A DNA stretch of 64,000 bases, taken from positions 1 through 64,000 of the forward strand of contig NIVC01003967.1 in NCBI GenBank assembly GCA_002269645.1, read 5' to 3'. Position numbers and translations under genes: made by a program. Shown here in pieces: positions 11,199 to 62,176 of the stretch (the first letter of the stretch is position 1; each line of letters starts with the position of its first letter). The notes beneath the pieces were generated by a model. That model saw only the letters and a list, made by a program, of their open reading frames with translations. It was not told where the DNA came from and did no database searches. The DNA is from Macrostomum lignano. Taxonomy: Eukaryota.

Positions 11199-13046
11199 AT
11201 GGAGCGGCGCAAGAACGGCGTCATGCTGTTCTGCGAGTGCAGCTCGATCCGAGGAATGCCAAAGATCGCTCGCTCGTCATCAAAATTTCTACGCAAAATG
11301 TGGCTCGCATTTGTCGTTGGAATGAGTCTGGCGTTAATAGTTTCCGTGTCCTTCTCTGTCCATCGCTATCTCAACTATGACGTCATAGTGCATATTTCCG
11401 ACAAGCAGAAGTTCAATTCAAAGTTTCCAGCTATAACGGTGTGCCTGCACCAGCCGTTCTCACGAAGCGCGTTCCCGTTGTGGTCCAACAAATCGGTGAT
11501 GTCGCCGAGAAGCTACAACCGACTACTGCGCGATCTCGCGTTGAAAGCGATCAATAGGACTGGCGATTTCTCAGCTATTAGCAACGATAACATGGACCCC
11601 ATAGAATATGCCCTGTACTACGACTCTGTTGAGGTTTACTATCAGAACATTCCTTACGAGAGCATCATCAGGCTCAGTCACGCACAGAGCGTTATTCGAA
11701 AGTGCATCGTCCGCCAAATGGGCGTTATCTTCTTCAAAGATCCCTGCGACCTCAGCGAGCACGGCTTCGATATAAAACTTTTTTCGCATCCCAAGCACCT
11801 AAACTGCTACACCGTAGAGCCAAGAGAACAGAAAACCTCTCTAGAAACCTACTCCCTTGGACTGGCTGTTGACCTGGGACCCAAGCCCGACTACGCCAAC
11901 CATCAGCAGGGCTTTCTAAACGACGTCTTTGATCAGGCGGCGGGTCTGCGCGTGGTAATCCACGAACCGAACCGCTATCCAGATGTCGAACATCAAGGCA
12001 TGAACATTGAGGCGGGAAAAATGACTGAACTGGCCTACACACCGACTATCTGGAACCGGAGCAACACGCCCGTGAATCCGTGCATCGAGGGCGAGGGTGA
12101 GTCCTACATGGATCTAGGTCGGAACTTTGACTACTCCCAAAAAGAGTGCATCAAGCTCAACAGGCAGCAACTAGTGATGGAGAACTGCAACTGCATCCTG
12201 GGCGTGCCGGGCTACCCCAGGCCCCGAGTGCCCACCAAGGAGAATGCCTACTGTGCTGCTTTCAGCGAGGCCTTCAACAAAACCTTCAAAGACTTCATAG
12301 ACCGTGTTAGCTGCGTCGGCGAAATCATGAGTCGACCTGAGCCGCCTTGCCTATCCCGTTGCGTGCTGTTCGAATACGAAACGAAGATCTCTGTGACCGA
12401 GTGGGGCGCCACAGACTGGCAGGTAGACTGGTCAGGCAGGTACGTGAACGATATTGAAACTCTGGTGAAGCTAATCGAGGCAAGAGAGACAACGCCTGAA
12501 GACTCTCGATCACCGGGATGGCGTAAGAATTTTGACAACGTCAAGCAGCGTCTACTGCGCTACCTAGAGGAAGACAACCTGACTTCGACTGCTCAGACCA
12601 ACGATCGCATGTTGGAATCGAAGAGTTTCGCGTACGTTTTGCTGAAACGAAAGGGCGACAACCTAATTTTAAAGGAGGAGAAGCAGGTGCTGACATTGAA
12701 TGCCCTGATGTCTCAGATTGGCGGGCTCTGCTCCCTAACCATCGGCCTCACTTGCGCTGTCGCCGTTGAAATTGTCGAGTTTGTCTATATCTACCTGACG
12801 TCAAGGCGAAACGACAGCACTGAGAACTCCGCTAATGCCACGGCCGCTGCGGCGGTGACAACAGCGGCTGCGACAGCGGAGAGTCAAGCAGCCGCAGCTG
12901 CGACATCCATGTCAGCCGATGCCATGCGCCTTAGGGCCGCTAATTCTGGATCTGACGGGGACGACATGGACGTCGATGCGGACGGCGATGGCAGCGACCA
13001 GCTTCCGATGAACTGCCACCGTCGGGCGGATGTCTCCCGGCTATGA
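11199..13046 (+). CDS. DEG/ENaC (amiloride-sensitive sodium channel family) subunit, intronless, 615 aa
   Basis: TM1 after the FCECSSIRG motif; FPAITVC; GLRVVIHEP; Cys-rich thumb (ECIK..CNC..C..C..C); TM2 MSQIGGLCSLTIGLT; Ala-rich tail. Confidence 0.92.
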   Translation: MERRKNGVMLFCECSSIRGMPKIARSSSKFLRKMWLAFVVGMSLALIVSVSFSVHRYLNYDVIVHISDKQKFNSKFPAITVCLHQPFSRSAFPLWSNKSVMSPRSYNRLLRDLALKAINRTGDFSAISNDNMDPIEYALYYDSVEVYYQNIPYESIIRLSHAQSVIRKCIVRQMGVIFFKDPCDLSEHGFDIKLFSHPKHLNCYTVEPREQKTSLETYSLGLAVDLGPKPDYANHQQGFLNDVFDQAAGLRVVIHEPNRYPDVEHQGMNIEAGKMTELAYTPTIWNRSNTPVNPCIEGEGESYMDLGRNFDYSQKECIKLNRQQLVMENCNCILGVPGYPRPRVPTKENAYCAAFSEAFNKTFKDFIDRVSCVGEIMSRPEPPCLSRCVLFEYETKISVTEWGATDWQVDWSGRYVNDIETLVKLIEARETTPEDSRSPGWRKNFDNVKQRLLRYLEEDNLTSTAQTNDRMLESKSFAYVLLKRKGDNLILKEEKQVLTLNALMSQIGGLCSLTIGLTCAVAVEIVEFVYIYLTSRRNDSTENSANATAAAAVTTAAATAESQAAAAATSMSADAMRLRAANSGSDGDDMDVDADGDGSDQLPMNCHRRADVSRL

Positions 13047-24643: not shown

Positions 24644-26513
24644 TTATATTTGAGTAGGAGGTTTTTCCAAATAAGCAGTAGAGGGAAAAACATAACCAAA
24701 CGACGTACTACCACATACAACTGCACCACGAATAAAATGTGCAGCATCCGATCCTCCAGTTCGAGCACCAAAACCCATAAGGGTTCCAGTCTTATCCAAC
24801 GTTCCCCAAGTGCCACTATCATATGTGAAAACGTTCTGCCCAATGAGGGTATAAGAATCGGCCGAAACATTGTATGAATTTAATTGATACCAAACCCTTT
24901 GATTTAAAATATTAATTTCAAATAAATGCCAATCGCCGTTATCAATATTTGCATAATCTACCGTTTGATCTGCGTCAGTATTAACATCCGCGCGGCTTGA
25001 TCCGTCTGATTTTTTATTACTCCATACAACGCCAAATTTATCATGCCACTCACTTGCAAAAACTATCAATCCGGCGTCGGTTGTTAATCCAGTCCCACCT
25101 TCACTTGTTGGGCGTTCGTGACAATATGCATAAAACCAAACCGCATCTGCACCATCTCCTGTAGAATTAGCGACTCGGAAATAGAAAGACGCAGATATAT
25201 TTTGAAAATGTGTGAAATTGAATTGTAATGCCCCACTTACTCCACCAGTTTCACGAGTAATTCTAGCTCCATTTTGATAATCGATATAAGAAGCGTCGCC
25301 AATTAAAGAACCAACTGGATATATATCTCCAGCGGTTGTTGGATTTTGATATCCAGTCCAATTACAAATTACTGGCTCGAATAATGCGGCATCAATCGCG
25401 GGAATATTATCCAATTTATTTTTATCACCGGCAGACATTCTACCATTTGAAGTTGGAGTTGCTACCTGATCTACGTACGCTCGCGGGTAGCAGATAGTAT
25501 TTCATTTGGCCAATTAAGATCTTGAATTTCAACTCGGTGTTCAAATAATTGTATTAGACGAACCTCGATAGGTTGTGTAGCGGTGCCACCAGTTGGGAAT
25601 AAAACGCTATAATATTTCCAAAAATTAACCGTTAAATTAGTTAACGCAAATGAAGTTGCTTGAATTGGTGATCCCGACGTTCGTAATACCGTCCATGCAT
25701 CGGTAGCAACATTTTTTGCACGAACCGACCATCCCGATGGAATATCAATAGTTGCGCTGCCTGTAATTCTTAATTCATTTATTCTTCGATTATAACCTAA
25801 AAATTCAAATTGAATTTCCATATTGGTTGTGGTTCCGGTATTTGGTGACCATTGTGTCGCAAGGCTTCCATCTCCAACTCGAAAAGCATCGTTGGTATTT
25901 TCGGATGCTGTAAGAACAACATCTGGATTTGAAGTATTTGATGTAAGCGGCGTGGCAAAAATATCGGCGTCGGTTACATTAGCTCGAGCGTTGACCTGCC
26001 CTAAATTGACCGAGTCTGTGGCCTCTGTTCCAAATAATAAATTTGTTAATTTAAAATTATTCATATTGATATTGCCGTTACGACTACCAACCTGATTATC
26101 GACATAGTTCTTATCAACTACCGAGTTATTCGTTGTAATTGCAACATTTATAATTCGATTGTTATCCATATCTAAAGTTCCGGTTGCGGTGGCTTGAACA
26201 TAACGCGAATCAGAATCAGTTCGAGAATAAGAATCAGTTATATCTCTTTTTAAATTTAACCCAGTGTCAACCTCTGATTTTGTATATGAATCGCTAATAT
26301 CTCTTTTAAGATTTAATGAAGTATCGATTTCAGTTTTGGTATAGGAATCTGCAACATTCCGTTTCAAATTTAGTTTAGTATCAACTTCACTTTTTTATAA
26401 CCTTCATCTTCATTAATATATCGATTATCTCCGAAGGTAACACTTATTCCACCAGACGTACCACCACCAGTACTTGTTGTTCCGTTCCATGAGGGTGTTC
26501 CAGAAAATATCAT
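24644..26513 (-). CDS. Fibre/receptor-binding protein, ~623 aa, split by two -1 frame breaks (~26391, ~25485)
   Basis: YTKxEVD repeats; LDMDNNRIINVA and TDSVNLGQ adhesin-stalk motifs; F5/8-type-C-like domain; GRMSAGDKNKLD motif; C-terminal legume-lectin-like GDGADAVWF..NGDWHLFEI. Confidence 0.8.
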
Positions 26514-26524
26514 TTTTTTACTGT

Positions 26525-26965
26525 CTATTTTATAGAGTCTAAAATAGTCTTAAATACTTTGTGGTTTACACGAGCTTCATTCGAAAGTCGATATAAAAAA
26601 TATAACGCTGCTTGTCCGCAATAACTTTTATCAAAGGTTTGAAACTGTTCGTGATGATCTCCACATAAACGATTTTTAGTATGATTAAATTTATCTTTTA
26701 TTTCCTGTAACGGAGGAAGCGCGTATGAATCAAAAAAATAAACAAGTTTAGGTTTGGAATAAACTGCCGACCAATGAGCCCCGTTTTCTTTTGTAGTTTC
26801 GATGTTGACAATGTAAGATCCATATTGTGGTAAGTCTTTTATCTCATCCCGCATCACACATCTGAATGGTTTTATTTTTAACTGCCGCGCCCAATTTGTT
26901 AATTCGATATTGCTTGTTGTGTCTGTTCCATATCTTTGTTTAAAATCATCCCACGTCATGGTCAT
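26525..26965 (-). CDS. PRO: Adenain-family cysteine maturation protease, 146 aa
   Basis: GAHW, FFDSY, Q..SYCG: catalytic His/Asp/Gln/Cys present. Confidence 0.92.
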   Translation of the reverse strand: MTMTWDDFKQRYGTDTTSNIELTNWARQLKIKPFRCVMRDEIKDLPQYGSYIVNIETTKENGAHWSAVYSKPKLVYFFDSYALPPLQEIKDKFNHTKNRLCGDHHEQFQTFDKSYCGQAALYFLYRLSNEARVNHKVFKTILDSIK

Positions 26966-26966
26966 T

Positions 26967-27140
26967 TTATGTTCCTGAAAAACTCTTGGTTTTAGTTAGT
27001 TTTGTAGGTTTGGATTTTAACAGTTCCTTTCGGATTTTTTCTGCCTGTAATTGTTTCAATTTTGTTAGTTCGATTTCATAATTATCCTTTGCATTTTGAA
27101 CTTTATCTGATTGTTTTTTTAAAGCATTGTTGTTACCCAT
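26967..27140 (-). CDS. Small basic protein, 57 aa, possible N-myristoylation (absent from ORF track)
   Basis: GTAAAAATG then MGNNNALKKQSDKV...TKSFSGT; its stop abuts the protease start. Confidence 0.55.
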   Translation of the reverse strand: MGNNNALKKQSDKVQNAKDNYEIELTKLKQLQAEKIRKELLKSKPTKLTKTKSFSGT

Positions 27141-27184
27141 TTTTACTATGGGAAACGGACGATGTCCTCGAACCTTTGGTTCGG

Positions 27185-27969
27185 CTAAACCTGTTTTATA
27201 CGTAAAATTACTGTTATTGATTGCCCACCAAAACTTATTAATCTATCGGTTTCATCTACAATCCTAATATAAATTGATTGAACATTATATTGATTTAATG
27301 GGTAATATATTGGGGTTTGGGTGAAACAATCATTTTCTCTCCAATTGGAACAGCAAGAAATGGGATGGAATAAATAATTCCACGTTGAACCAAAACTCCA
27401 TTATTATCTGTTATATAACCGCCGTTTGATATGTCGGTTGTTATATTAATTGTATTAACACCACCCTCAATATTTCCAACTGTATCGCCGGTGCTTGATG
27501 TGGTAACTATTCGAGAATTAAATCCAAGTATGGTTCTGAGTGAATTTGCAATTGTGAAATCAACCTGATATCCGGATTCGAGTGATAGTGTGAATCTGCC
27601 AGATGGTAAATCAACACCTATAACAATTGCGCCTGATACCCAATCGCCGTTAGATGTTAATTCTCCTTCTATATAAGCATTCAAATCGGTATAAGAATAT
27701 GCTCCTGGGTTAACGCTAAATGTTGTCCAATTGGCTCCGGAATCTTTAGAATATCTAAATTGATTATTTGTTGCATTAATTAATTGAGGCATGTTAAAAA
27801 CCGAAAATAGTATCAAACCTATTTGATAACTTAGGCTTTGATCAAGTTGTAACGGGTCGCGCAATTGAATACGTTGTTCACTGGTTGTCATTATAAACTG
27901 TAAGGTTGTACTAAATTTTGAATTAGTTCGATCTACCAATTGTTTTATAGTATTTAAATTTGTAGTCAT
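27185..27969 (-). CDS. PX: Minor capsid protein (penton, single jelly-roll), ~261 aa, one -1 break at ~27312
   Basis: Adding one C restores IYYPLNQYNVQSIYIRIVDETDRLISFGGQSITVILRIKQV*, a typical Polinton penton C-terminus. Confidence 0.85.
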
Positions 27970-27984
27970 TTTTATAGTGGGAAA

Positions 27985-28738
27985 TTAATCCTCATCGTCC
28001 TCTTTCATCAGATCTTTTAAGATTCGATTTTTCCTTTCTAACCTTGGGTTGATATATATATGTTTGTATTGGCTATCATCCCAAATTTTTTTACACAACT
28101 TTTAAATGTTTTGTATCCAACCCAGGATTAAATCTAGCGTGTATATTTTGTAAATCATAATTATCTAAATCAAACATTACACAACAACTTGCATTCTTTT
28201 TTATAATCGATTCTAATTCTCTAAAGGACTGTGTTAGATAAAAAGCTCCAATTCCATCTCCTCTACCACTAACAAAAATTTCCTTTTGCAATTCTTGATC
28301 ACCGTCATTAATACAATCATCAAAAATAATTAGTGTTTTATCATGTTTTGGAATTTGATCATAGGCTAATCGGGTTGATACTCTAACAGTTGGGGCTCGT
28401 TCGGTGATGTTTTCTGGTTGTTGTGCCATTGTTTTACATAAATCCTCAATGTCATCGAGTGTAAATCGCGGTTCGTCATCATCCTCATATTGCTCATATG
28501 CTCTTAACATTCTAAACAAGACATCTTTTTTTAATTTGTTTTTTAATCCATGTTTAAGAAATTCATAATATTTTATTCTAGGTTTGTTAGTATAAATTAT
28601 TAAATTATTATAGTCTAACATTCCATCTGTTGTTAATAAATCGTAAACAAAGTGTGTTTTTCCTTTACCTGATCCTCCGATTACTAAACAAAGAAAAGGA
28701 TCATTTGGAAATATCTTATCGTGTTTTGCCTTTACCAT
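27985..28738 (-). CDS. ATP: FtsK/HerA (A32-like) genome-packaging ATPase, ~251 aa, frame break near 28105
   Basis: Walker A GGSGKGKT; Walker B LIIFDD; SGRG..I..FYLTQS; C-terminus FKKLCKKIW..QYKHIYIN in another frame. Confidence 0.92.
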
Positions 28739-28753
28739 TTTTAAAGAAATAAT

Positions 28754-30226
28754 TTAAATAGGCGCGTCCCGAACAATCGTGCCATCAGCTTTAGCAATTG
28801 ACATATATTCCTCTAGAAACAATACGTGTGCGTCTATTGCCTGATTACCAGTTTTATTAATCTCTAACATATAATTAAGTCCAATATTGGCTACGTTTTC
28901 TTTCTGTGCCGTTAGATCATAAACAACCACTGGATGAATGTTTAGAAACTCTGTGGGTGTGTACTGAGGGACGGCATACGCTTCATTTTTGGCATAATCT
29001 TGATAATATTTTATAAAATCATTAACATTATTATTTGCTATATTTAAATTTAGGGGGTCTTTAACCGGATAATATTGATCATCAACCTGCAGGCGGATAT
29101 TCTGAACATTAAACTCGTTAATAGCTGCAGCCGCATTGTCTGTTGCGGTGGCTGCTTGTTCTGCTATGGCACCGGATTGAAGCCAATATAAATCCCCATT
29201 TGCTCTTTTACTCCTTCTGTTTGTTATTTTAAACCAAACAAAAATATATCTCACCCGACGTTTTGATGTCAGTATTTGCCACTGGAATGAATCCTGGTTA
29301 TTATTAATGGTTCGCATAAAATGTCGACGATTCAAATAAAATATTTCCTGATCATGCGTTAACTGATTATCAATGTGTTTTAAAAGTGGGGCTGTTACCT
29401 CAATAGTTGGTACGACTAATTGAATTGAATCTATACGAACTGCTATATCGGTTGAAATTGAGGTTCCATAAAGTATCCTAGGCTGATATCCACCAGATAT
29501 TTGCAACTGTATCCCAAATTTTAATCCTTTCCATACCCGATTTGGTGAGAAGAACCCAAATAGCGGGAAGATTGAAAAGTCCTGCTCATATGCCGTTGCC
29601 GTGGTTAAAACTGCAACTGGGAATTTATTCTGGCGATCTATAAAGCCGGTGTTAATATCTTTTGTATTAGTCATAGTGGTTACAACTGGAACTATGTTTG
29701 TATTAAGGTAAGCAATTAGAGCTGCAGTATCTGCACCAGCTGCGTTTTGTACATTAGGGAAAACTACTGCTTGACCGTTACCTTTATCCGGCATCCACCC
29801 AACATTATCACCAACTTGTTTTGATAAATAAGTATAATTTAAATGTTTCAAAACTCCATTAATCTCTGCGGGGTTTGATGATGTCTCAACCTCAGCACCA
29901 TTAACAGTTAGTTGAGCTTGGGAAAAACATTTATAAAACCAATCATTTTCTATTATTATTCCGGATCGATCTGCGATATCTCCGGCTGCAAGAGCAGTTC
30001 CATCATTTCTAGTATACAACCATCTAACGCGGAAAAACGCATTTTTCATATCCAATATAGTGTTGGTTGCGCCGATGTCAAAAGTTACCGTTCCAGTAGT
30101 AAAGTTATTTGAATTATCACTTGTTGGTAGGGTATAATTTAAATCTCTTGCTCTGACCTCATTAATATACTGTCGGTGCTTTTTGAAATGAAATTTATCA
30201 CTCCACATAGTTTTTGTTTCAGCCAT
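28754..30226 (-). CDS. PY: Double-jelly-roll major capsid protein, 490 aa, intact
   Basis: Size and position; Polinton MCP-like segments FSQAQLTVNGAEVE, FGFF, RYIFVWF, NIRLQVDDQYYP, VYDLT. Confidence 0.88.
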   Translation of the reverse strand: MAETKTMWSDKFHFKKHRQYINEVRARDLNYTLPTSDNSNNFTTGTVTFDIGATNTILDMKNAFFRVRWLYTRNDGTALAAGDIADRSGIIIENDWFYKCFSQAQLTVNGAEVETSSNPAEINGVLKHLNYTYLSKQVGDNVGWMPDKGNGQAVVFPNVQNAAGADTAALIAYLNTNIVPVVTTMTNTKDINTGFIDRQNKFPVAVLTTATAYEQDFSIFPLFGFFSPNRVWKGLKFGIQLQISGGYQPRILYGTSISTDIAVRIDSIQLVVPTIEVTAPLLKHIDNQLTHDQEIFYLNRRHFMRTINNNQDSFQWQILTSKRRVRYIFVWFKITNRRSKRANGDLYWLQSGAIAEQAATATDNAAAAINEFNVQNIRLQVDDQYYPVKDPLNLNIANNNVNDFIKYYQDYAKNEAYAVPQYTPTEFLNIHPVVVYDLTAQKENVANIGLNYMLEINKTGNQAIDAHVLFLEEYMSIAKADGTIVRDAPI

Positions 30227-30259
30227 TTTTTTAAGTTAAAAATTTTTTTATGTTAAAAA

Positions 30260-30931
30260 ATGAGTCAATTTATGGACGTTGATGGAGAGTTAGCGATTTA
30301 TAAAGAGAAGCAAAGATATTCTGATTTTGTTAGAAATTTACAAAAAAGAAAGTTAGGAATACAATTAGCTGGCGAAAGATTTGCTGCTCCTTTTGTTAAT
30401 CCTATTACTGGGAAAATTAGTGAACTAGAAAAAACAGATAAAGATCTTCTGGAAAAAATTGCTACGAATACTGAGCCAAAAGAGGATGAAATTTTGGATG
30501 AGCCGCCTACTTATGGTGTTGCTCATGCACAATTGAGAGTTGCAGAGATTAGACGTGCAGAAAGGAATGGAGTTGAACAATATCAGAGAGCTGCACCACA
30601 AAGTATTGCTGTGATGGATTTAGGTAATGATAATTATCGAATTGGTGGAGTTGATAAAAATCAGAATGAACTATATACAGAATTGGGTGGAGCGTTTAAT
30701 ATTATTATGAACCCTAGGGTAAAGTTTAACCCTGAATTATATACTAGAGATGAATTAGTAAGTGCAAAAATTTTTTATGATGAGTTGGGAATAAGAGCTG
30801 CTAAAAATACCAGCTTGTATAAAAGGATTGTTGATTCTATAAATAACAAACCGGTCGTTGGTGAAGGATTTAAAACTCCTAGAAAACTTGTTTTAGCTGC
30901 TGCGAAAGCTGCTGGACATACTGGTGTTTAA
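30260..30931 (+). CDS. Conserved-type Polinton protein (PW/PZ-like), 223 aa
   Basis: FVNPIT N-terminal motif; GEG..KLVLAAAKAAGHTG C-terminal motif. Confidence 0.55.
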   Translation: MSQFMDVDGELAIYKEKQRYSDFVRNLQKRKLGIQLAGERFAAPFVNPITGKISELEKTDKDLLEKIATNTEPKEDEILDEPPTYGVAHAQLRVAEIRRAERNGVEQYQRAAPQSIAVMDLGNDNYRIGGVDKNQNELYTELGGAFNIIMNPRVKFNPELYTRDELVSAKIFYDELGIRAAKNTSLYKRIVDSINNKPVVGEGFKTPRKLVLAAAKAAGHTGV

Positions 30932-30958
30932 TTAATTGTTAAATTTATTTTTTATAAA

Positions 30959-31528
30959 ATGGATGAAACAAAAATTTGTACTACGTGTAAAATTGAGAAA
31001 CCGATGACTAAAGAATTTTTTTGTTGGAGAAACGATTCGAAAAAATTTAGAAATGATTGTCGATCATGTCATAATACTTCGTCTACAATGTGGATGAAAA
31101 ACAATAAAGATAAATGGAAAGAATATAGAAAAAATAAATATCACACCGATGAAAATTACAAAAATATTACTCTAATTAGAAATAGAATAAATTGGGCGTT
31201 GAAAAATTTTAATGACAAGGACTATATCTCATATCTTGGTTGCACAAAAGAATTCTTTTTTGATTGGTTAAATTTCACAAGAAATTATTATGTATCAAAA
31301 GATTATACTGGAAAGTTAGATATTGATCATTTGATCCCCGCTTCTTCATTTACTTACAAAGATAATGACCAGATGAAAAAGTCTGAAAATTGGAGAAATA
31401 AAAGATACTTAACTAGCGCAGATAATCGCTATAAAAAAGTTAAGCAACCAACTATCGAAGAATTTGCAAAACAATTAGTGTTAACTTGTATTTTTAAGGC
31501 TATTAAAAATGAACCAACTTGTGTTTGA
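30959..31528 (+). CDS. Zn-finger plus HNH endonuclease (giant-virus/phage type), 189 aa
   Basis: CTTC..CRSC; YLGCTKE; IDHLIP..WRN..ADNRYK. Confidence 0.8.
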   Translation: MDETKICTTCKIEKPMTKEFFCWRNDSKKFRNDCRSCHNTSSTMWMKNNKDKWKEYRKNKYHTDENYKNITLIRNRINWALKNFNDKDYISYLGCTKEFFFDWLNFTRNYYVSKDYTGKLDIDHLIPASSFTYKDNDQMKKSENWRNKRYLTSADNRYKKVKQPTIEEFAKQLVLTCIFKAIKNEPTCV

Positions 31529-32783
31529 AGGAGGATTGTTAGATGTTCAAAAAGGATTAACAAGCTTACCACCAATCTTTACTACTGGAAGGTATACAAA
31601 TGAATTACACATCCCATCTTACAACTTCGCAGGCCCGGGGACTAGGTTAGATTTGAGATTAAATCCTGATAATACTCCAAAAGCCGATTCAATTCCCATT
31701 AACGGTATTGATTGGTTAGCATACTATCATGACTTAGCATACAGAGATGCTGATAAGAACTCACCCGAGGAAGCATTAAGATTAAAACATGAAGCCGATA
31801 GAAAAATGATTCAAGGATTAGATAACTTACAGGGCTTATCGGTAGGTCAAAAATTAACTAGATGGATGGTTAAAAAAATCTTACAGTCTAAAGTTAAATT
31901 TGGTTTGGGAATTAATTATAATCAACATGGAAATAATTGTGTTGAGTGTTTATTATTAAGTGGTAGTGGGTTAAGTTCTGATGAGGCAAAAGTTCTTCAT
32001 AAAGAATATCGAAAACCTAAATTTTATAGAAAAATCATGAACTTCAAAAAGAATGAAATTTGGTATGCTGATTTAATGTCATTGCCGAGCGACAGAGGAT
32101 ATAAATATATTTTAACCATATTGGATGGTTTTACTCGATACGCGTGGGCAGTTCCTTTAAAATCCAAAAAGGGAGAGGAGGTTGCTGCTGCTTTTAGAAG
32201 TCTTGATGAAAAAAGTGAACGGTTGTGTGTTGATGAGGGAAAAGAATTTTACAATCCTCATATGTATAAATTATATCATTTTGAAAAAGGACAAGAAAGG
32301 AAAAAAGACGCGAATGGGGAGTATATTAATAAAATTTATTCTATTTATGGAGAAAGTAAAAACGCATTAATAGAAAGATTTAATCGAACTTTAGGTAAGA
32401 AATTATGGTTTCAGTTTAGTCTTAATGGAAACCAAAAGTGGGTAAAAATATTACCAGACGTTGTAAAAGATTATAACAATTCATATCATTCGGCTATAAA
32501 GATGACTCCTCAACAAGCTTATAACAATCCTGAAAAAGTTAAAGTTACTTTTGGAGAATTTGAAAAAAAGAAAACTAAAGGTTTTAAGGTTGGTGATTCT
32601 GTTTATATCTATAAATGGAAAGATAAGTTTGAAAAAGGAAGAAAAGGATATTGGAAGATAAGTGAGAAATTTACCATCAGTAAAGTTTTAAATACAAATC
32701 CTACAACCTATATAATTGCTGATAAGGATGGTGAAGAAATATTGGGTTCTTTTTATGAGAATCAGATATTATCTGCAAACTAA
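31509..32783 (+). CDS. INT: Parvovirus VP1u-type phospholipase A2 fused to retroviral-like DDE integrase, 424 aa
   Basis: YNFAGPGT, AYYHDLAY, EADRKM (PLA2); WYADLM, CVDEGKEF, LIERFNRTL (D,D,E); FKVGD..GSFYE C-terminal domain. Confidence 0.95.
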   Translation: MNQLVFEGGLLDVQKGLTSLPPIFTTGRYTNELHIPSYNFAGPGTRLDLRLNPDNTPKADSIPINGIDWLAYYHDLAYRDADKNSPEEALRLKHEADRKMIQGLDNLQGLSVGQKLTRWMVKKILQSKVKFGLGINYNQHGNNCVECLLLSGSGLSSDEAKVLHKEYRKPKFYRKIMNFKKNEIWYADLMSLPSDRGYKYILTILDGFTRYAWAVPLKSKKGEEVAAAFRSLDEKSERLCVDEGKEFYNPHMYKLYHFEKGQERKKDANGEYINKIYSIYGESKNALIERFNRTLGKKLWFQFSLNGNQKWVKILPDVVKDYNNSYHSAIKMTPQQAYNNPEKVKVTFGEFEKKKTKGFKVGDSVYIYKWKDKFEKGRKGYWKISEKFTISKVLNTNPTTYIIADKDGEEILGSFYENQILSAN

Positions 32784-32793
32784 GTTCGAACAG

Positions 32794-32961
32794 TTACTTA
32801 AGACAACAAGGTAGTAAATTTTTTATAACAAACAAAAACAATATTATTACTATTATTGTTACTAATATTATTATTGACATTTGTTCAACTGTTATCAAAC
32901 TTAAATTTTCATTAAGTTCATTAATCGGCACATTTCCGATGTAGGAATAATTTACCTTCAT
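32794..32961 (-). CDS. Small single-pass membrane protein, 55 aa (absent from ORF track)
   Basis: TAAAAAAAATG start; MKVNYS..SIIILVTIIVIILFLFVIKNLLPCCLK*. Confidence 0.55.
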   Translation of the reverse strand: MKVNYSYIGNVPINELNENLSLITVEQMSIIILVTIIVIILFLFVIKNLLPCCLK

Positions 32962-33022
32962 TTTTTTTATATATATTTTTCATAATAAATGTCGTTTCTG
33001 TTATAGAATAATAATTCATTTT

Positions 33023-33337
33023 TTACATAAAAATTTCAATTTCATTCTCAGAATCACTGGTTTCATATGAGCTATTTGTTGATTCGGAATCTGTTGATCT
33101 AACCTCCCAATCATCCGAATTTAAATAATCTCCAAGTTGAAATATTAACTCTCCCTCTTGTTCTAATTCATACATCTCATCTAGCTCTAATGGATAAAGC
33201 TTTAGGTCATGCTTGTCGTCATATTTTAAATAAACTTCATCAATTATTCCATTCAAAATATGTTGTTTTATTATCTCTGCATTTTTAGCAACAGTCTCAA
33301 AAGTATCACTAACAGAAAAGGTGTAAACTCGGGTCAT
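33023..33337 (-). CDS. Polinton acidic orphan, 104 aa
   Basis: TAAAAATG start; D/E/S-rich C-terminus. Confidence 0.65.
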   Translation of the reverse strand: MTRVYTFSVSDTFETVAKNAEIIKQHILNGIIDEVYLKYDDKHDLKLYPLELDEMYELEQEGELIFQLGDYLNSDDWEVRSTDSESTNSSYETSDSENEIEIFM

Positions 33338-33354
33338 TTTTAGTAACAGAAAAA

Positions 33355-33660
33355 GACCCTTCGCGCCTGCGGCGCGGGCAAGGGGTTATAGAGTAGTAGT
33401 ATAGAAAAAGACGCTTACAGATCAGACCTTATTTTAATGGCCGTTTTTAAGGTCTTAAGAGGGGGGACGCGAGGGGGTGTTGGGGAGTGTTTGGAAGTGT
33501 TGGGAATGATTTTTATTGTTAGGGGTGATTATGGGTGATTAGATGTATTAATGGTGTTTAGATGTGTTTTTTTATTTACCCCCCGTGTCCCCCCTCTAGA
33601 CCCTTAAAACGGTCATTAAAAAAGTGCTCTGGGTCTGTAAGCGTCTTTTTCTATACTACT
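33355..33660 (-). repeat. Right terminal inverted repeat (306 bp)
   Basis: Reverse complement of 16488-16793. Confidence 0.98.
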
Positions 33661-33666
33661 GAACAG

Positions 33667-60796: not shown

Positions 60797-62176
60797 CTAG
60801 TCGCCTCTGGTCAAAATCCATATTGACACAGCCAGATTCAAGACAAAGTAAATGATGAGAAAAACTCTGTCCAAAATGATTCCTAGAAAACGCCATTTAT
60901 TCTCGTCCTGTCCGAAATGACTCTCTGGGTTTGTCGTCGACAGCGGCACCTCAGAATCCTCGTGACGCGTCACCGGATTCTGTCCGGCCTGGCGTGGCTT
61001 CATCGCGAACGAGATGACTTTGACAGCGGCCTCATTGTGATGCGTCAGCGGCAATCCGACGTACTTGCCGCTTTCCAGTATCTTAATGAAGCAGGCTGGC
61101 ATGCAGAAGTCCTTACCCTTCAGCGATATGTTGTAGCTGATTATAGTCTTGATGTTGGCGAGGCTCACTAGTGCTATGGCTATGCAGAAGTAGATTCCTA
61201 GCACCGGTACAGCGTCGCCTGATCGGGGAATGTTGTCCGACACCATCAATAGGAAAACCATCAACGACAGTAGAATAGTGGTGACGTAAGCTATCTTCTC
61301 GCCGCACTCGGTTGGCATGATAAAGACGAATAGCGTCAGCCAAGTGAGCAGCATGCACGGGAACAGCATATAGACCTGCTGGAACATGTACTTTCGCTTG
61401 AGCCGCAGTTGGAAAGCAACCTCGCTATATTGTCTCGAACGACCAGAAGCTTCATCGAGACCGACTTTTCTGTCCGCTACGCGATCGAAGGACGGGAAAC
61501 CCTCCACCATCCACTCACCGTTGCTGGCACTGACAAAAGCATGATCTTCTTTTTTGCCGGGCGCTTCTTCTTTCTTGACAAGCAAGAAATTGCTGGTATC
61601 CTTCGTCCAAGAACTGAACGTGATGTTGCAGCGCTGTCTATCGTACGGAAACTGTGCTATGTTGATCCGACAGAAAGACTTGAACACAGCCTGAGCTCCT
61701 AGCTGAATGGAGCCATCGCTAAAGATTCTGGCCTTGGACTCGCCGTAGATGAACATGCCCTCTTCGAAGTTTCCGTGCAGAGACTCGTAGAATATAAGAT
61801 CGGGGTACCAGATCTCCTCCGCCTTGATGACAAAGTTATCAATATTGTTAAAGCGCTTCGGATCCCATGTCAGCCGACAGTCTTTCCATGTCGATTCAAC
61901 CCAGACGTCAACCGTGAGCATCTGGGTTGGTTCGTCAAGATCGAACAGCTGAATAAGCAGCATATCCTGTTGAATCTTCAGCTTCTTTCCCAGCTCGCAG
62001 ATTGGCATAGCGTTCGCCTTGTACGGCGTTGTCTCGTTTTCAAATAAATAAGCCAGTAGGCCATCGTAGATGGTGTTCTTCGGCCCCAGCTGGCCCGAGG
62101 ACGATGCGACAACGCTAGGAAAAACTGAAATACACGATGGTAGGACCAGCAGAAGTATTAGACGCACCAGATGCAT
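60797..62176 (-). CDS. Cys-loop ligand-gated channel, nAChR non-alpha type, intronless, 459 aa
   Basis: Signal peptide; WYPD; Cys-loop CRINIAQFPYDRQRC; no vicinal CC in loop C; GEK before TM2 (cation-selective type); four TMs. Confidence 0.93.
   Translation of the reverse strand: MHLVRLILLLVLPSCISVFPSVVASSSGQLGPKNTIYDGLLAYLFENETTPYKANAMPICELGKKLKIQQDMLLIQLFDLDEPTQMLTVDVWVESTWKDCRLTWDPKRFNNIDNFVIKAEEIWYPDLIFYESLHGNFEEGMFIYGESKARIFSDGSIQLGAQAVFKSFCRINIAQFPYDRQRCNITFSSWTKDTSNFLLVKKEEAPGKKEDHAFVSASNGEWMVEGFPSFDRVADRKVGLDEASGRSRQYSEVAFQLRLKRKYMFQQVYMLFPCMLLTWLTLFVFIMPTECGEKIAYVTTILLSLMVFLLMVSDNIPRSGDAVPVLGIYFCIAIALVSLANIKTIISYNISLKGKDFCMPACFIKILESGKYVGLPLTHHNEAAVKVISFAMKPRQAGQNPVTRHEDSEVPLSTTNPESHFGQDENKWRFLGIILDRVFLIIYFVLNLAVSIWILTRGD

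What the first reader, a model, noticed from the sequence alone, without database searches (positions are those of the whole stretch)
31509..32783. Parvovirus-type phospholipase A2 fused in frame to the Polinton integrase, with protease-site linkers
Seen: one uninterrupted ORF carries a complete PLA2 domain (~31602-31910; YxxGPG Ca-binding loop, HD catalytic pair) and an intact DDE integrase. The linker LSGS|G (31956-31970) fits the adenain consensus (M/I/L)xGx|G, and FEGG|L sits at the N-terminus. Established: parvovirus VP1u PLA2 mediates endosomal escape. Inference: the enzyme pair is packaged as one polyprotein and cut by the element's protease, so each virion would deliver both membrane breach and integration. 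I cannot confirm whether this fusion is already described.
Basis: partly seen in the sequence, partly recalled or inferred. Interest (0 to 1): 0.85.

Follow-up and report, generated by a model that had tools for sequence, protein, structure and literature searches.

The report
Phospholipase–integrase fusion gene in a Polinton
A virus-like mobile element recently inserted in an animal genome encodes its integrase fused to a parvovirus-type phospholipase A2 domain; the fusion is real and shared by dozens of related elements, but the proposed protease cutting sites are no better than chance.

Summary
The ORF 31509-32783 (424 aa) is real and uninterrupted. Residues ~30-134 form a parvovirus-type PLA2 domain (GPG loop, H74-D75, Y78, D97) and residues ~180-345 a DDE integrase core (D188, D242, E289). 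A disordered linker joins them. All these residues are invariant across 28 homologues of 32-74% identity.

The gene sits in a 17.2 kb Polinton/Maverick with 306-nt TIRs (305/306 identical) and a 6-bp target duplication, inside a metazoan genome.

The fusion is not unique: 73 of the 120 nearest integrase relatives carry it. Sister elements encode the two domains as adjacent ORFs or as separate genes.

LSGS|G is at chance level (1 observed, 0.70 expected) and lies in a hypervariable linker; only 4 of 28 homologues have any canonical site there. FEGG|L does not fit the adenain consensus. Two other Gly motifs are conserved at the exact borders of the PLA2 domain: GG-D and K-x-x-hydrophobic-G-x-G. 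They are better but untested candidates.

PLA2 genes in Polintons are already published (PLA2X, CAP). I found no paper describing the integrase fusion. Verdict: a real, conserved new variant of a known kind; packaging and processing remain inference.

The parts
16488..33660 (.). Whole Polinton/Maverick-type element (17,173 bp), low G+C (~30-36%) against 42-50% flanks
   Evidence: TIRs, composition, gene content
16482..16487 (.). Left copy of the 6-bp target-site duplication GAACAG
33661..33666 (.). Right copy of the 6-bp target-site duplication GAACAG
16488..16793 (+). Left terminal inverted repeat, 306 nt, begins 5'-AG
   Evidence: 305/306 identical to the right arm
33355..33660 (-). Right terminal inverted repeat, 306 nt, ends CT-3'
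31509..32783 (+). PLA2-integrase fusion ORF, 424 aa, uninterrupted
31509..31535 (+). Short N-terminal leader (aa 1-9) ending in the conserved Gly-Gly (G8 at least 90% conserved), followed by conserved D12; leaders of relatives are 0-50 aa, some with Zn-ribbons
31527..31928 (+). Parvovirus-type PLA2 domain (PF08398-like); Ca-loop G42-P43-G44; catalytic H74-D75 (31728-31733), Y78, D97
   Evidence: HMM hit E 6.8e-52; invariant residues; model pLDDT 90-97; Foldseek hits to entomopoxvirus PLA2-like protein and denso/parvovirus VP1; AAV VP1u profile hit
31890..31910 (+). Conserved K128-x-x-F131-G132-x-G134 motif at the C-terminal edge of the PLA2 domain; candidate processing site
   Evidence: K128 and G132 invariant, G134 at least 90%; stand-alone PLA2 ORFs stop a few residues after it; the disordered segment starts here
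31911..32030 (+). Disordered, hypervariable linker (aa 135-174)
   Evidence: pLDDT below 50; 7-72 aa and mostly gapped in homologues
31956..31970 (+).
32046..32543 (+). rve-type DDE integrase catalytic core (aa ~180-345); D188 (32070-32072), D242 (32232-32234), E289 (32373-32375)
32580..32780 (+). C-terminal beta-rich SH3/chromo-like domain of the integrase (aa ~358-424)
   Evidence: conserved block, strands in the model, PF00385 in some rve-only relatives
26525..26965 (-). Putative maturation protease, 146 aa, clan CE-like (H63, D78, Q108, C115)
   Evidence: invariant or near-invariant residues; sub-threshold profile hits to SENP8 (E 0.12) and adenain (E 0.18); homologue in L001
28754..30226 (-). 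Double jelly-roll major capsid protein
   Evidence: BLASTP E 2.6e-22 and 1.7e-9 to genes carrying PF21738 in L001 and L003
28091..28738 (-). A32/FtsK-type packaging ATPase
   Evidence: BLASTP E 2e-29 to a PF04665-marked gene in L001; Walker A GGSGKGKT
27295..27969 (-). Candidate minor capsid (penton) protein
   Evidence: position between ATPase and protease; homologue in L001 (E 3.5e-20); fold not tested
18944..22436 (+). Protein-primed family B DNA polymerase with an endonuclease VII-like insert; broken: read in three frames (two frame changes)
30959..31528 (+). Endonuclease VII/HNH-like gene immediately upstream, overlapping the fusion ORF start by 20 nt
   Evidence: PHROG endonuclease VII E 2.8e-6
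17385..18371 (+). Gly-rich and hydrophobic protein with repeated G-x-G-hydrophobic motifs; possible precursor of small virion or membrane-active peptides
   Evidence: 6 motifs against 0.37 expected

Best explanation
This is the integrase gene of a recently integrated Polinton/Maverick (adintovirus-like) element in an animal genome. In this lineage the retrovirus-type DDE integrase carries a catalytically complete parvovirus-type PLA2 domain at its N-terminus, joined by a flexible linker.

Shown: the architecture is maintained by selection. Both catalytic residue sets are invariant down to about 32% identity, and the fusion is found in most of the nearest integrase relatives. More distant elements encode the same two domains as adjacent ORFs or as separate genes.

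Inferred: PLA2 and integrase are both needed by the incoming particle, PLA2 to breach a membrane as in parvovirus VP1u and the integrase to insert the genome. The fusion would then be a way to co-express and co-package them.

Whether they are then cut apart is open. They are the conserved Gly-Gly after the N-terminal leader and the conserved K-x-x-hydrophobic-G-x-G at the exact C-terminal edge of the PLA2 domain. The likely enzyme is the element's clan CE-like cysteine protease.
For: ORF intact.

PLA2: invariant G42, P63, N65, D68, H74, D75, Y78 and D97 in 28 sequences. PF08398 is precomputed on homologues. The domain model has pLDDT 90-97 and matches viral PLA2-like proteins. The profile hits AAV VP1u.

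Integrase: DDE triad invariant. PFV integrase match at E 1e-13 and MELD-virus and mavirus integrases at E 1e-15 and 4e-12.

Element: 306-nt TIRs 305/306 identical, 6-bp TSD, AG..CT termini. MCP, ATPase, protease and PolB identified.

Distribution: 73 of 120 nearest relatives are fused, and they sit in Polinton-like contigs with DJR capsid, A32 ATPase and PolB genes. Adjacent and separate arrangements occur in other relatives.

Boundaries: the linker is disordered. Stand-alone PLA2 ORFs end just after the G-x-G motif. GG-D is conserved behind variable leaders.

Literature: PLA2 in Polintons is inferred to be virion-packed for entry (PMC4642659, PMC8502044, PMC5803895).
Against: There is no evidence here for expression, enzyme activity, packaging or cleavage.

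This copy's PolB reads in three frames, so the copy may not be autonomous, unless these are assembly errors.

Canonical adenain motifs are at chance level and not conserved. The conserved Gly motifs have non-canonical P4 residues and could be structural caps rather than protease sites. The broad GG-hydrophobic pattern is not enriched in the element's proteome (3 against 1.36 expected, P=0.15).

The protease assignment rests on motif order and sub-threshold hits. Its homologues carry no Pfam call.

Linkers as short as 7 residues in some relatives fit an uncleaved two-domain protein just as well.
Confidence: 0.6

Rival explanations
1. The fusion protein stays uncleaved. The PLA2 domain remains tethered to the integrase, much as VP1u stays tethered to the parvovirus capsid, and so to the genome ends. 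Membrane penetration and delivery of the integration complex would then be physically coupled. The conserved Gly motifs would be helix caps or hinges, not protease sites.
For: Linkers are as short as 7-13 residues in many relatives. No canonical protease site is conserved. The parvovirus PLA2 works while tethered (established knowledge; Zadori 2001, cited in PMC5803895). The integrase lacks a separate N-terminal zinc-binding domain, so the PLA2 occupies the N-terminal position.
Against: Sister elements encode the two domains as separate genes, some on opposite strands, so covalent linkage is not required. The PLA2 borders carry conserved Gly-Gly and G-x-G motifs in disordered segments, and the second coincides with the natural C-terminus of stand-alone PLA2 proteins. 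The element encodes a clan CE-like protease.
Confidence: 0.25
2. Exactly: a polyprotein cut by an adenain-like protease at LSGS|G (aa 150-154) and FEGG|L (aa 6-10) under the adenovirus consensus.
For: LSGS|G fits (M/I/L)xGx|G and lies in a disordered linker. The closest homologue, P0001, has IHGK|G at the same place. A post-hoc narrow pattern [DEQ]GG[LI]L occurs 3 times in the element's proteome against 0.05 expected, and one of these is the N-terminal EGG|LL.
Against: One match against 0.70 expected (P=0.52). Canonical matches also occur in PolB and in the ATPase P-loop. Only 4 of 28 homologues have a canonical site in the linker and 4 of 28 at the N-terminus. FEGG|L has Phe at P4. The linker around LSGSG is gapped in most relatives. 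The specificity of Polinton proteases is unknown.
Confidence: 0.08
3. The fusion is an artefact or a dead gene: an assembly or annotation join of two neighbouring genes, or a pseudogene in a decaying insertion whose PLA2 is no longer functional.
For: This copy's PolB is read in three frames. In some relatives PLA2 and integrase are in different frames.
Against: The same in-frame fusion occurs in 73 of the 120 nearest relatives from independent ENA, JGI, Logan and NCBI assemblies, at 31-74% identity and with all catalytic residues kept. TIRs are 305/306 identical and the TSD is intact, so the insertion is young.
Confidence: 0.03

Closest known systems
Adintovirus PLA2X and insect Maverick 'CAP' genes (Starrett 2021, PMC8502044; Geisler 2018, PMC5803895; Yutin 2013/2015, PMC3671162, PMC4642659)
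   Same: A parvovirus-type PLA2 domain encoded by a Polinton/Maverick with a DJR capsid, an A32-type ATPase, an adenain-like protease, a PolB and an rve integrase. It is inferred to be a virion entry enzyme.
   Different: There the PLA2 is a separate gene whose C-terminal part resembles adenovirus pX (PLA2X) or is called capsid-like (CAP). Here the C-terminal partner is the integrase itself. The window contains no second PLA2 gene.
Parvovirus VP1 unique region (VP1u) PLA2
   Same: Same domain family (PF08398), same GPG loop and HD-Y-D residues, similar predicted fold, and N-terminal placement on a larger virion-associated protein.
   Different: In parvoviruses the carrier is the capsid protein of an ssDNA virus. 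Here it is a DDE integrase of a dsDNA element. Identity is low (about 20-28% in structural alignments).
Retroviral Pol / Gag-Pol polyprotein (PR-RT-IN)
   Same: An rve-type integrase made as the C-terminal part of a multi-enzyme precursor that is packaged and, in retroviruses, released by the viral protease. The integrase core is structurally closest to foamy-virus integrase.
   Different: There is no RT, RNase H or aspartic protease and no HHCC N-terminal domain. The partner is a lipase. Processing is not shown. The protease would be a clan CE cysteine enzyme.
Adenovirus protein VI and adenain maturation
   Same: A membrane-lytic virion factor flanked by protease sites and released by a clan CE cysteine protease during maturation.
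   Different: Protein VI is an amphipathic-helix lytic factor, not a lipase. The adenain consensus is not conserved in this family.
Mavirus and MELD-virus rve integrases
   Same: Best viral structural matches for the C-terminal two-thirds of the protein.
   Different: The matching integrases are 327-358 aa, too short to hold the extra ~130-aa PLA2 domain.

Membership tests
Parvovirus-type phospholipase A2 domain (Pfam PF08398, Phospholip_A2_4) | Significant match to the family profile | tested here: met
   Homologues at 31-74% identity carry precomputed PF08398. The window domain scores E 6.8e-52 against an HMM of such domains. The family profile hits AAV VP1 residues 37-120 at E about 1e-3. 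No direct Pfam scan of the window protein was available.
Parvovirus-type phospholipase A2 domain (Pfam PF08398, Phospholip_A2_4) | Ca2+-binding (Y/F)xGxG loop | tested here: met
   F40-A41-G42-P43-G44. G42 is invariant in alignment A2, and G42/T45 are at least 90% conserved in A1.
Parvovirus-type phospholipase A2 domain (Pfam PF08398, Phospholip_A2_4) | Catalytic His-Asp dyad with downstream Tyr and distal Asp | tested here: met
   H74, D75, Y78 and D97 are invariant in 28 fused and 22 PLA2-only sequences.
Parvovirus-type phospholipase A2 domain (Pfam PF08398, Phospholip_A2_4) | Helical PLA2 fold | tested here: met
   Domain model pLDDT 81.6, pTM 0.73, with three long helices. Foldseek: entomopoxvirus PLA2-like protein at E 4e-5, TM 0.53-0.55; denso/parvovirus VP1 at probability 1.0, TM about 0.5.
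Parvovirus-type phospholipase A2 domain (Pfam PF08398, Phospholip_A2_4) | Phospholipase activity | not testable with these tools
   Sequence and predicted structure only.
Parvovirus-type phospholipase A2 domain (Pfam PF08398, Phospholip_A2_4) | Carried at the N-terminus of a capsid protein (parvovirus VP1u arrangement) | tested here: not met
   The C-terminal partner is an rve integrase, not a jelly-roll capsid protein.
Retrovirus-like (rve, DDE) integrase | RNase H-fold catalytic core | tested here: met
   PFV integrase core by sequence at E 5.6e-7, by profile at 6e-11, and by fold at 1.5e-13. IS481 and IS3 transposase models match below their cut-offs.
Retrovirus-like (rve, DDE) integrase | D, D, E catalytic triad | tested here: met
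   D188, D242 and E289 are invariant. The D-to-E spacing is 47 here because of an insertion, read off the alignment as about 20 aa, that is shared with the nearest relatives.
Retrovirus-like (rve, DDE) integrase | N-terminal HHCC zinc-binding domain | tested here: not met
   No HHCC pattern lies between residue 1 and the core. That space holds the PLA2 domain and a disordered linker. The rve-only relatives are also too short to hold one.
Retrovirus-like (rve, DDE) integrase | C-terminal SH3/chromo-like DNA- or chromatin-binding domain | tested here: inconclusive
   There is a conserved beta-rich C-terminal block of moderate pLDDT. PF00385 is called only in some rve-only relatives.
Polinton / Maverick (adintovirus-like) element | Long terminal inverted repeats with a 6-bp target-site duplication | tested here: met
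   306-nt TIRs 305/306 identical, GAACAG on both sides, AG..CT termini.
Polinton / Maverick (adintovirus-like) element | Protein-primed family B DNA polymerase plus rve integrase | tested here: met
   Integrase as above. PolB motifs are present in 18944-22436 with an Endo VII-like insert, but the gene is read in three frames. PF03175 is called on the PolB of related locus L001.
Polinton / Maverick (adintovirus-like) element | DJR major capsid protein and A32/FtsK packaging ATPase | tested here: met
   BLASTP to Pfam-marked genes of related loci: E 2.6e-22 for DJR and E 2e-29 for A32.
Polinton / Maverick (adintovirus-like) element | Adenain-like (clan CE) cysteine protease | tested here: inconclusive
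   His63/Asp78/Gln108/Cys115 are conserved in the clan CE order. The best profile hits are SENP8 (E 0.12) and adenain (E 0.18), both below significance. Homologues carry no Pfam call.
Adenain cleavage sites, (M/I/L)xGx|G or (M/I/L)xGG|x | Match to the consensus | tested here: met
   LSGS|G at aa 150-154 fits. FEGG|L does not, because P4 is Phe.
Adenain cleavage sites, (M/I/L)xGx|G or (M/I/L)xGG|x | More frequent than chance and placed in virion precursor proteins | tested here: not met
   1 observed against 0.70 expected, P=0.52. Matches also occur in PolB and the ATPase P-loop.
Adenain cleavage sites, (M/I/L)xGx|G or (M/I/L)xGG|x | Conserved position among homologues | tested here: not met
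   A canonical site occurs in the linker in 4 of 28 sequences and at the N-terminus in 4 of 28.
Adintovirus PLA2X | PLA2 domain followed by an adenovirus pX-like C-terminal domain in a separate gene | tested here: not met
   The PLA2 is followed in frame by the integrase. The window has no other PLA2 hit.

The most novel reading that the evidence does not exclude
PLA2-integrase is a true 'entry plus integration' precursor of a large Polinton clade. It would be trimmed by the element's clan CE protease at the conserved GG and G-x-G borders of the PLA2 domain. This would mean Polinton particles carry their integrase in the way retroviruses do. In sister elements the integrase frame has no start codon of its own and overlaps the PLA2 frame, so the ratio of PLA2 to PLA2-integrase could be set by a frame change or by splicing, in the manner of Gag and Gag-Pol.
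Probability: 0.15. Interest if true: 0.65.

Novelty: new variant of a known kind. Interest (0 to 1): 0.4.

Why it matters
No animal Polinton/Maverick particle has been characterised, so how these elements enter cells, and whether the integrase travels in the particle, is known only by inference. A conserved covalent link between a membrane-breaching lipase and the integrase is indirect evidence that both belong to the incoming particle. The three arrangements (fused, adjacent, separate) give a natural series for studying how such modules form.

The practical value is modest. It gives a domain architecture that annotators can recognise, and two conserved Gly motifs that can be checked in existing proteomic data. 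It does not change the accepted view that Polintons encode a PLA2 for entry.

Tried and rejected
- **Single-sequence PDB searches.** Searches with the protease, MCP and PolB gave nothing useful. A protease profile reached only sub-threshold clan CE hits.
- **Host identification.** The host species stays undetermined; the flanking DEG/ENaC-like and Cys-loop receptor ORFs show only that it is an animal.
- **RNA genes.** Rfam and tRNA scans of the window were empty.
- **Canonical adenain sites.** Enrichment and conservation were both tested and rejected.
- **Broader GG-hydrophobic pattern.** Not significant (P=0.15). Only a narrow pattern chosen after seeing the data stands out, which I treat as weak.
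- **Assembly artefact or pseudogene.** Rejected because of 73 independent fused relatives.
- **'Stand-alone PLA2 relatives are PLA2X genes'.** The nearest ones lie directly upstream of the integrase, often in another frame. Truly separate PLA2 genes occur in more distant elements.
- **Literature.** Eight full-text searches found PLA2 in Polintons described many times, but no PLA2-integrase fusion. The library is incomplete, so this is not proof of absence.
- **NCBIfam and PHROGs.** They added only IS481/IS3-like integrase matches, an endonuclease VII-like neighbour and a fibre-like ORF.
Full report
**1. What is there**

The window holds a 17,173-bp low-G+C element at 16488-33660 (about 30-36% G+C against 42-50% in the flanks). 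It is bounded by 306-nt terminal inverted repeats that differ at one position. The repeats begin 5'-AG and end CT-3', and a 6-bp direct repeat GAACAG flanks them. This is the classic integration signature of a Polinton/Maverick, and the near-identity of the arms indicates a young insertion.

The flanks encode a DEG/ENaC-like channel (11199-13046) and a Cys-loop receptor with the C-x13-C loop (60797-62176, minus strand). The host is therefore an animal. Its species could not be determined.

Inside the element I could assign these genes:
- A double jelly-roll major capsid protein (28754-30226, minus strand) and an A32/FtsK-type packaging ATPase (28091-28738, minus strand), both by BLASTP to Pfam-marked genes of related contigs.
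- A candidate penton protein (27295-27969, minus strand).
- A 146-aa cysteine protease candidate (26525-26965, minus strand).
- A protein-primed PolB with an endonuclease VII-like insert (18944-22436). It is read in three frames, meaning two frame changes.
- An endonuclease VII/HNH-like gene (30959-31528).
- The ORF of the finding.

**2. The observation**

ORF 31509-32783 is a single 424-aa frame.

The N-terminal part matches a PLA2-only HMM at E 6.8e-52 over 31527-31928. Homologues carry precomputed Pfam PF08398. A family profile also hits the VP1u region of AAV capsid proteins, residues about 37-120, at E about 1e-3. An AlphaFold model of residues 1-144 (pLDDT 81.6, with 90-97 over residues 31-120) gives three long helices. 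Its best matches among viral structures are a PLA2-like protein of an entomopoxvirus (E 4e-5, TM 0.53-0.55) and densovirus and parvovirus VP1 proteins.

The functional residues of the family are all present: the loop F40-A41-G42-P43-G44, then H74-D75, Y78 and D97. They are invariant in 28 fused proteins of 32-74% identity to the query and in 22 PLA2-only sequences.

The C-terminal part matches foamy-virus integrase cores by sequence (E 5.6e-7; profile 6e-11) and by fold (E 1.5e-13). It also matches MELD-virus and mavirus integrases. D188, D242 and E289 are invariant. There is no HHCC N-terminal domain.

Residues 134-174 are predicted to be disordered.

**3. Is the fusion real and maintained?**

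Yes. Of the 120 best integrase relatives, 73 carry both domains when scanned with separate HMMs. They come from independent ENA, JGI, Logan and NCBI assemblies. Two that sit on long contigs lie in Polinton-like gene sets with DJR capsid, A32 ATPase and PolB genes.

A PLA2-only profile finds 2,415 representative clusters in the 1.84-billion-protein library. Of the best 150, most are short proteins and 16 continue into an integrase.

Scanning all fetched loci shows three arrangements:
- Fused in one frame: the window, L001, L002 and L008.
- PLA2 directly upstream of the integrase, on the same strand but in another frame: L003-L007 and L012.
- PLA2 as a separate gene on the opposite strand, kilobases away: L009-L011, L014-L016, L020 and L021.

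In L007 the integrase has its own start codon. In L003, L004 and L006 the integrase frame has no start codon before its first catalytic Asp and overlaps the end of the PLA2 frame, with one frame change between them. L005 is a decayed copy.

So PLA2 is a common component of this group, its neighbourhood with the integrase is old, and the in-frame fusion characterises the window's subclade.

**4. The protease-site claim**

LSGS|G (aa 150-154, 31956-31970) fits the adenain consensus. However, the protein has 1 canonical match against 0.70 expected from shuffles (P=0.52), and equally good matches fall inside PolB and in the ATPase Walker A loop.

The site lies in a linker that is 7-72 residues long and mostly gapped in the alignment. 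Only the closest homologue has a similar site. Canonical sites occur in the linker of 4 of 28 homologues and at the N-terminus of 4 of 28. FEGG|L has Phe at P4 and is not canonical.

Two other motifs are conserved:
- A Gly-Gly followed by Asp (G8 and D12 at least 90% conserved), sitting behind leaders of 0-50 residues that include Zn-ribbons in some relatives.
- K128-x-x-hydrophobic-G132-x-G134, with K128 and G132 invariant, exactly where the last PLA2 helix ends and disorder begins.

Stand-alone PLA2 ORFs stop a few residues after this second motif, usually after a short basic tail. These are therefore the natural borders of the PLA2 unit. They are the better candidates for processing by a clan CE enzyme, since such enzymes generally cut at Gly-Gly or Gly-x-Gly bonds (established knowledge of adenain, Ulp1/SENP and the ASFV and poxvirus proteases). 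Neither motif has the adenoviral P4 residue, and both could be structural.

The protease candidate keeps His63, Asp78, Gln108 and Cys115 in the clan CE order across 17 sequences. Its profile reaches SENP8 and adenain only at E 0.12 and 0.18.

Another protein of the element (17385-18371) is strongly enriched in G-x-G-hydrophobic-hydrophobic motifs, 6 against 0.37 expected. It also has two 'GG plus hydrophobic stretch' modules like the N-terminal EGG|LL of the fusion protein. The general GG-hydrophobic pattern is not enriched in the proteome (P=0.15). The narrow pattern that is enriched was chosen after seeing the data.

**5. Mechanism**

Shown: a maintained two-enzyme protein with both active sites intact, in a young Polinton insertion that also encodes capsid, packaging and protease genes.

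Inferred from established knowledge: parvovirus VP1u PLA2 is needed for endosomal escape, and published work infers that Polinton lipases are packed in particles (PMC4642659, PMC8502044). On that basis the PLA2 acts at entry. The integrase must also act on the incoming genome. The fusion would then co-express and co-deliver the two.

Cleavage is possible but unproven. An uncleaved, tethered PLA2-integrase is a serious rival, because linkers are very short in many relatives.

**6. Comparison with what is known, and novelty**

PLA2 domains in Polintons/Mavericks are well documented:
- Yutin 2013 and 2015.
- The 'CAP' gene of Spodoptera Mavericks (PMC5803895).
- The adintovirus 'PLA2X' gene (PMC8502044).

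In all of these it is a separate gene. Eight full-text searches found no description of a PLA2-integrase fusion. The library is incomplete, and the architecture is plainly visible in protein databases.

I therefore rate it a new variant of a known kind. It is of moderate interest, mainly as indirect evidence that the integrase is part of the incoming particle.

Noticed in passing
window 17385-18371 (+): A 328-aa Gly-rich protein with two tandem 'GG followed by a long hydrophobic stretch' modules and six G-x-G-hydrophobic-hydrophobic repeats (6 against 0.37 expected). It looks like a precursor of small membrane-active or core peptides. No family match in PHROGs.
   Followed up: partly
window 18944-22436 (+): The PolB gene is read in three frames (two frame changes) although the TIRs are 305/306 identical and every other core gene is intact. 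This could be real decay or homopolymer errors in an AT-rich assembly. It carries an endonuclease VII-like insert.
   Followed up: partly
window 30959-31528 (+): An endonuclease VII/HNH-like gene (PHROG E 2.8e-6) lies directly upstream of the fusion ORF and overlaps its start by 20 nt. The element therefore holds two endonuclease VII-like sequences, the other inside PolB.
   Followed up: partly
window 16724-16753 and 33395-33424: Each 306-nt TIR contains an inverted copy (2 mismatches in 30) of its own terminal sequence about 236 nt inward, so each end could fold back on itself.
   Followed up: no
window 25471-26367 (-) and 24644-25438 (-): Two consecutive ORFs with higher G+C. The first has three tandem 'DSYTK.E.DT.LNLKRDI'-type repeats and weak matches to phage tail-fibre families, so it may be a fibre or receptor-binding protein.
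   Followed up: partly
L003, L004, L006 (and L012): In these relatives the PLA2 and integrase ORFs are in different frames (one frame change). In L003, L004 and L006 the integrase frame has no start codon before its first catalytic Asp. L003 and L004 come from two samples and differ by substitutions yet share the arrangement. Sequencing error, an intron or a programmed frame change are all possible.
   Followed up: partly
L009-L011, L014-L016, L020, L021: Related IMG/VR elements keep a PLA2 as a separate gene of about 200-350 codons on the strand opposite to the integrase, with a C-terminal extension. This is the published PLA2X/CAP-like arrangement.
   Followed up: partly
window 11199-13046 (+) and 60797-62176 (-): Host genes: a DEG/ENaC-like channel and a Cys-loop receptor, each as a long single ORF. 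This suggests an intron-poor animal genome. The species was not identified.
   Followed up: no
window 31509-32783, aa ~255-275: By eye from the alignment, the window protein and its nearest relatives have an insertion of about 20 aa between the second Asp and the Glu of the DDE triad. The D-to-E spacing is 47 here and about 35 in sequences without the insertion.
   Followed up: no
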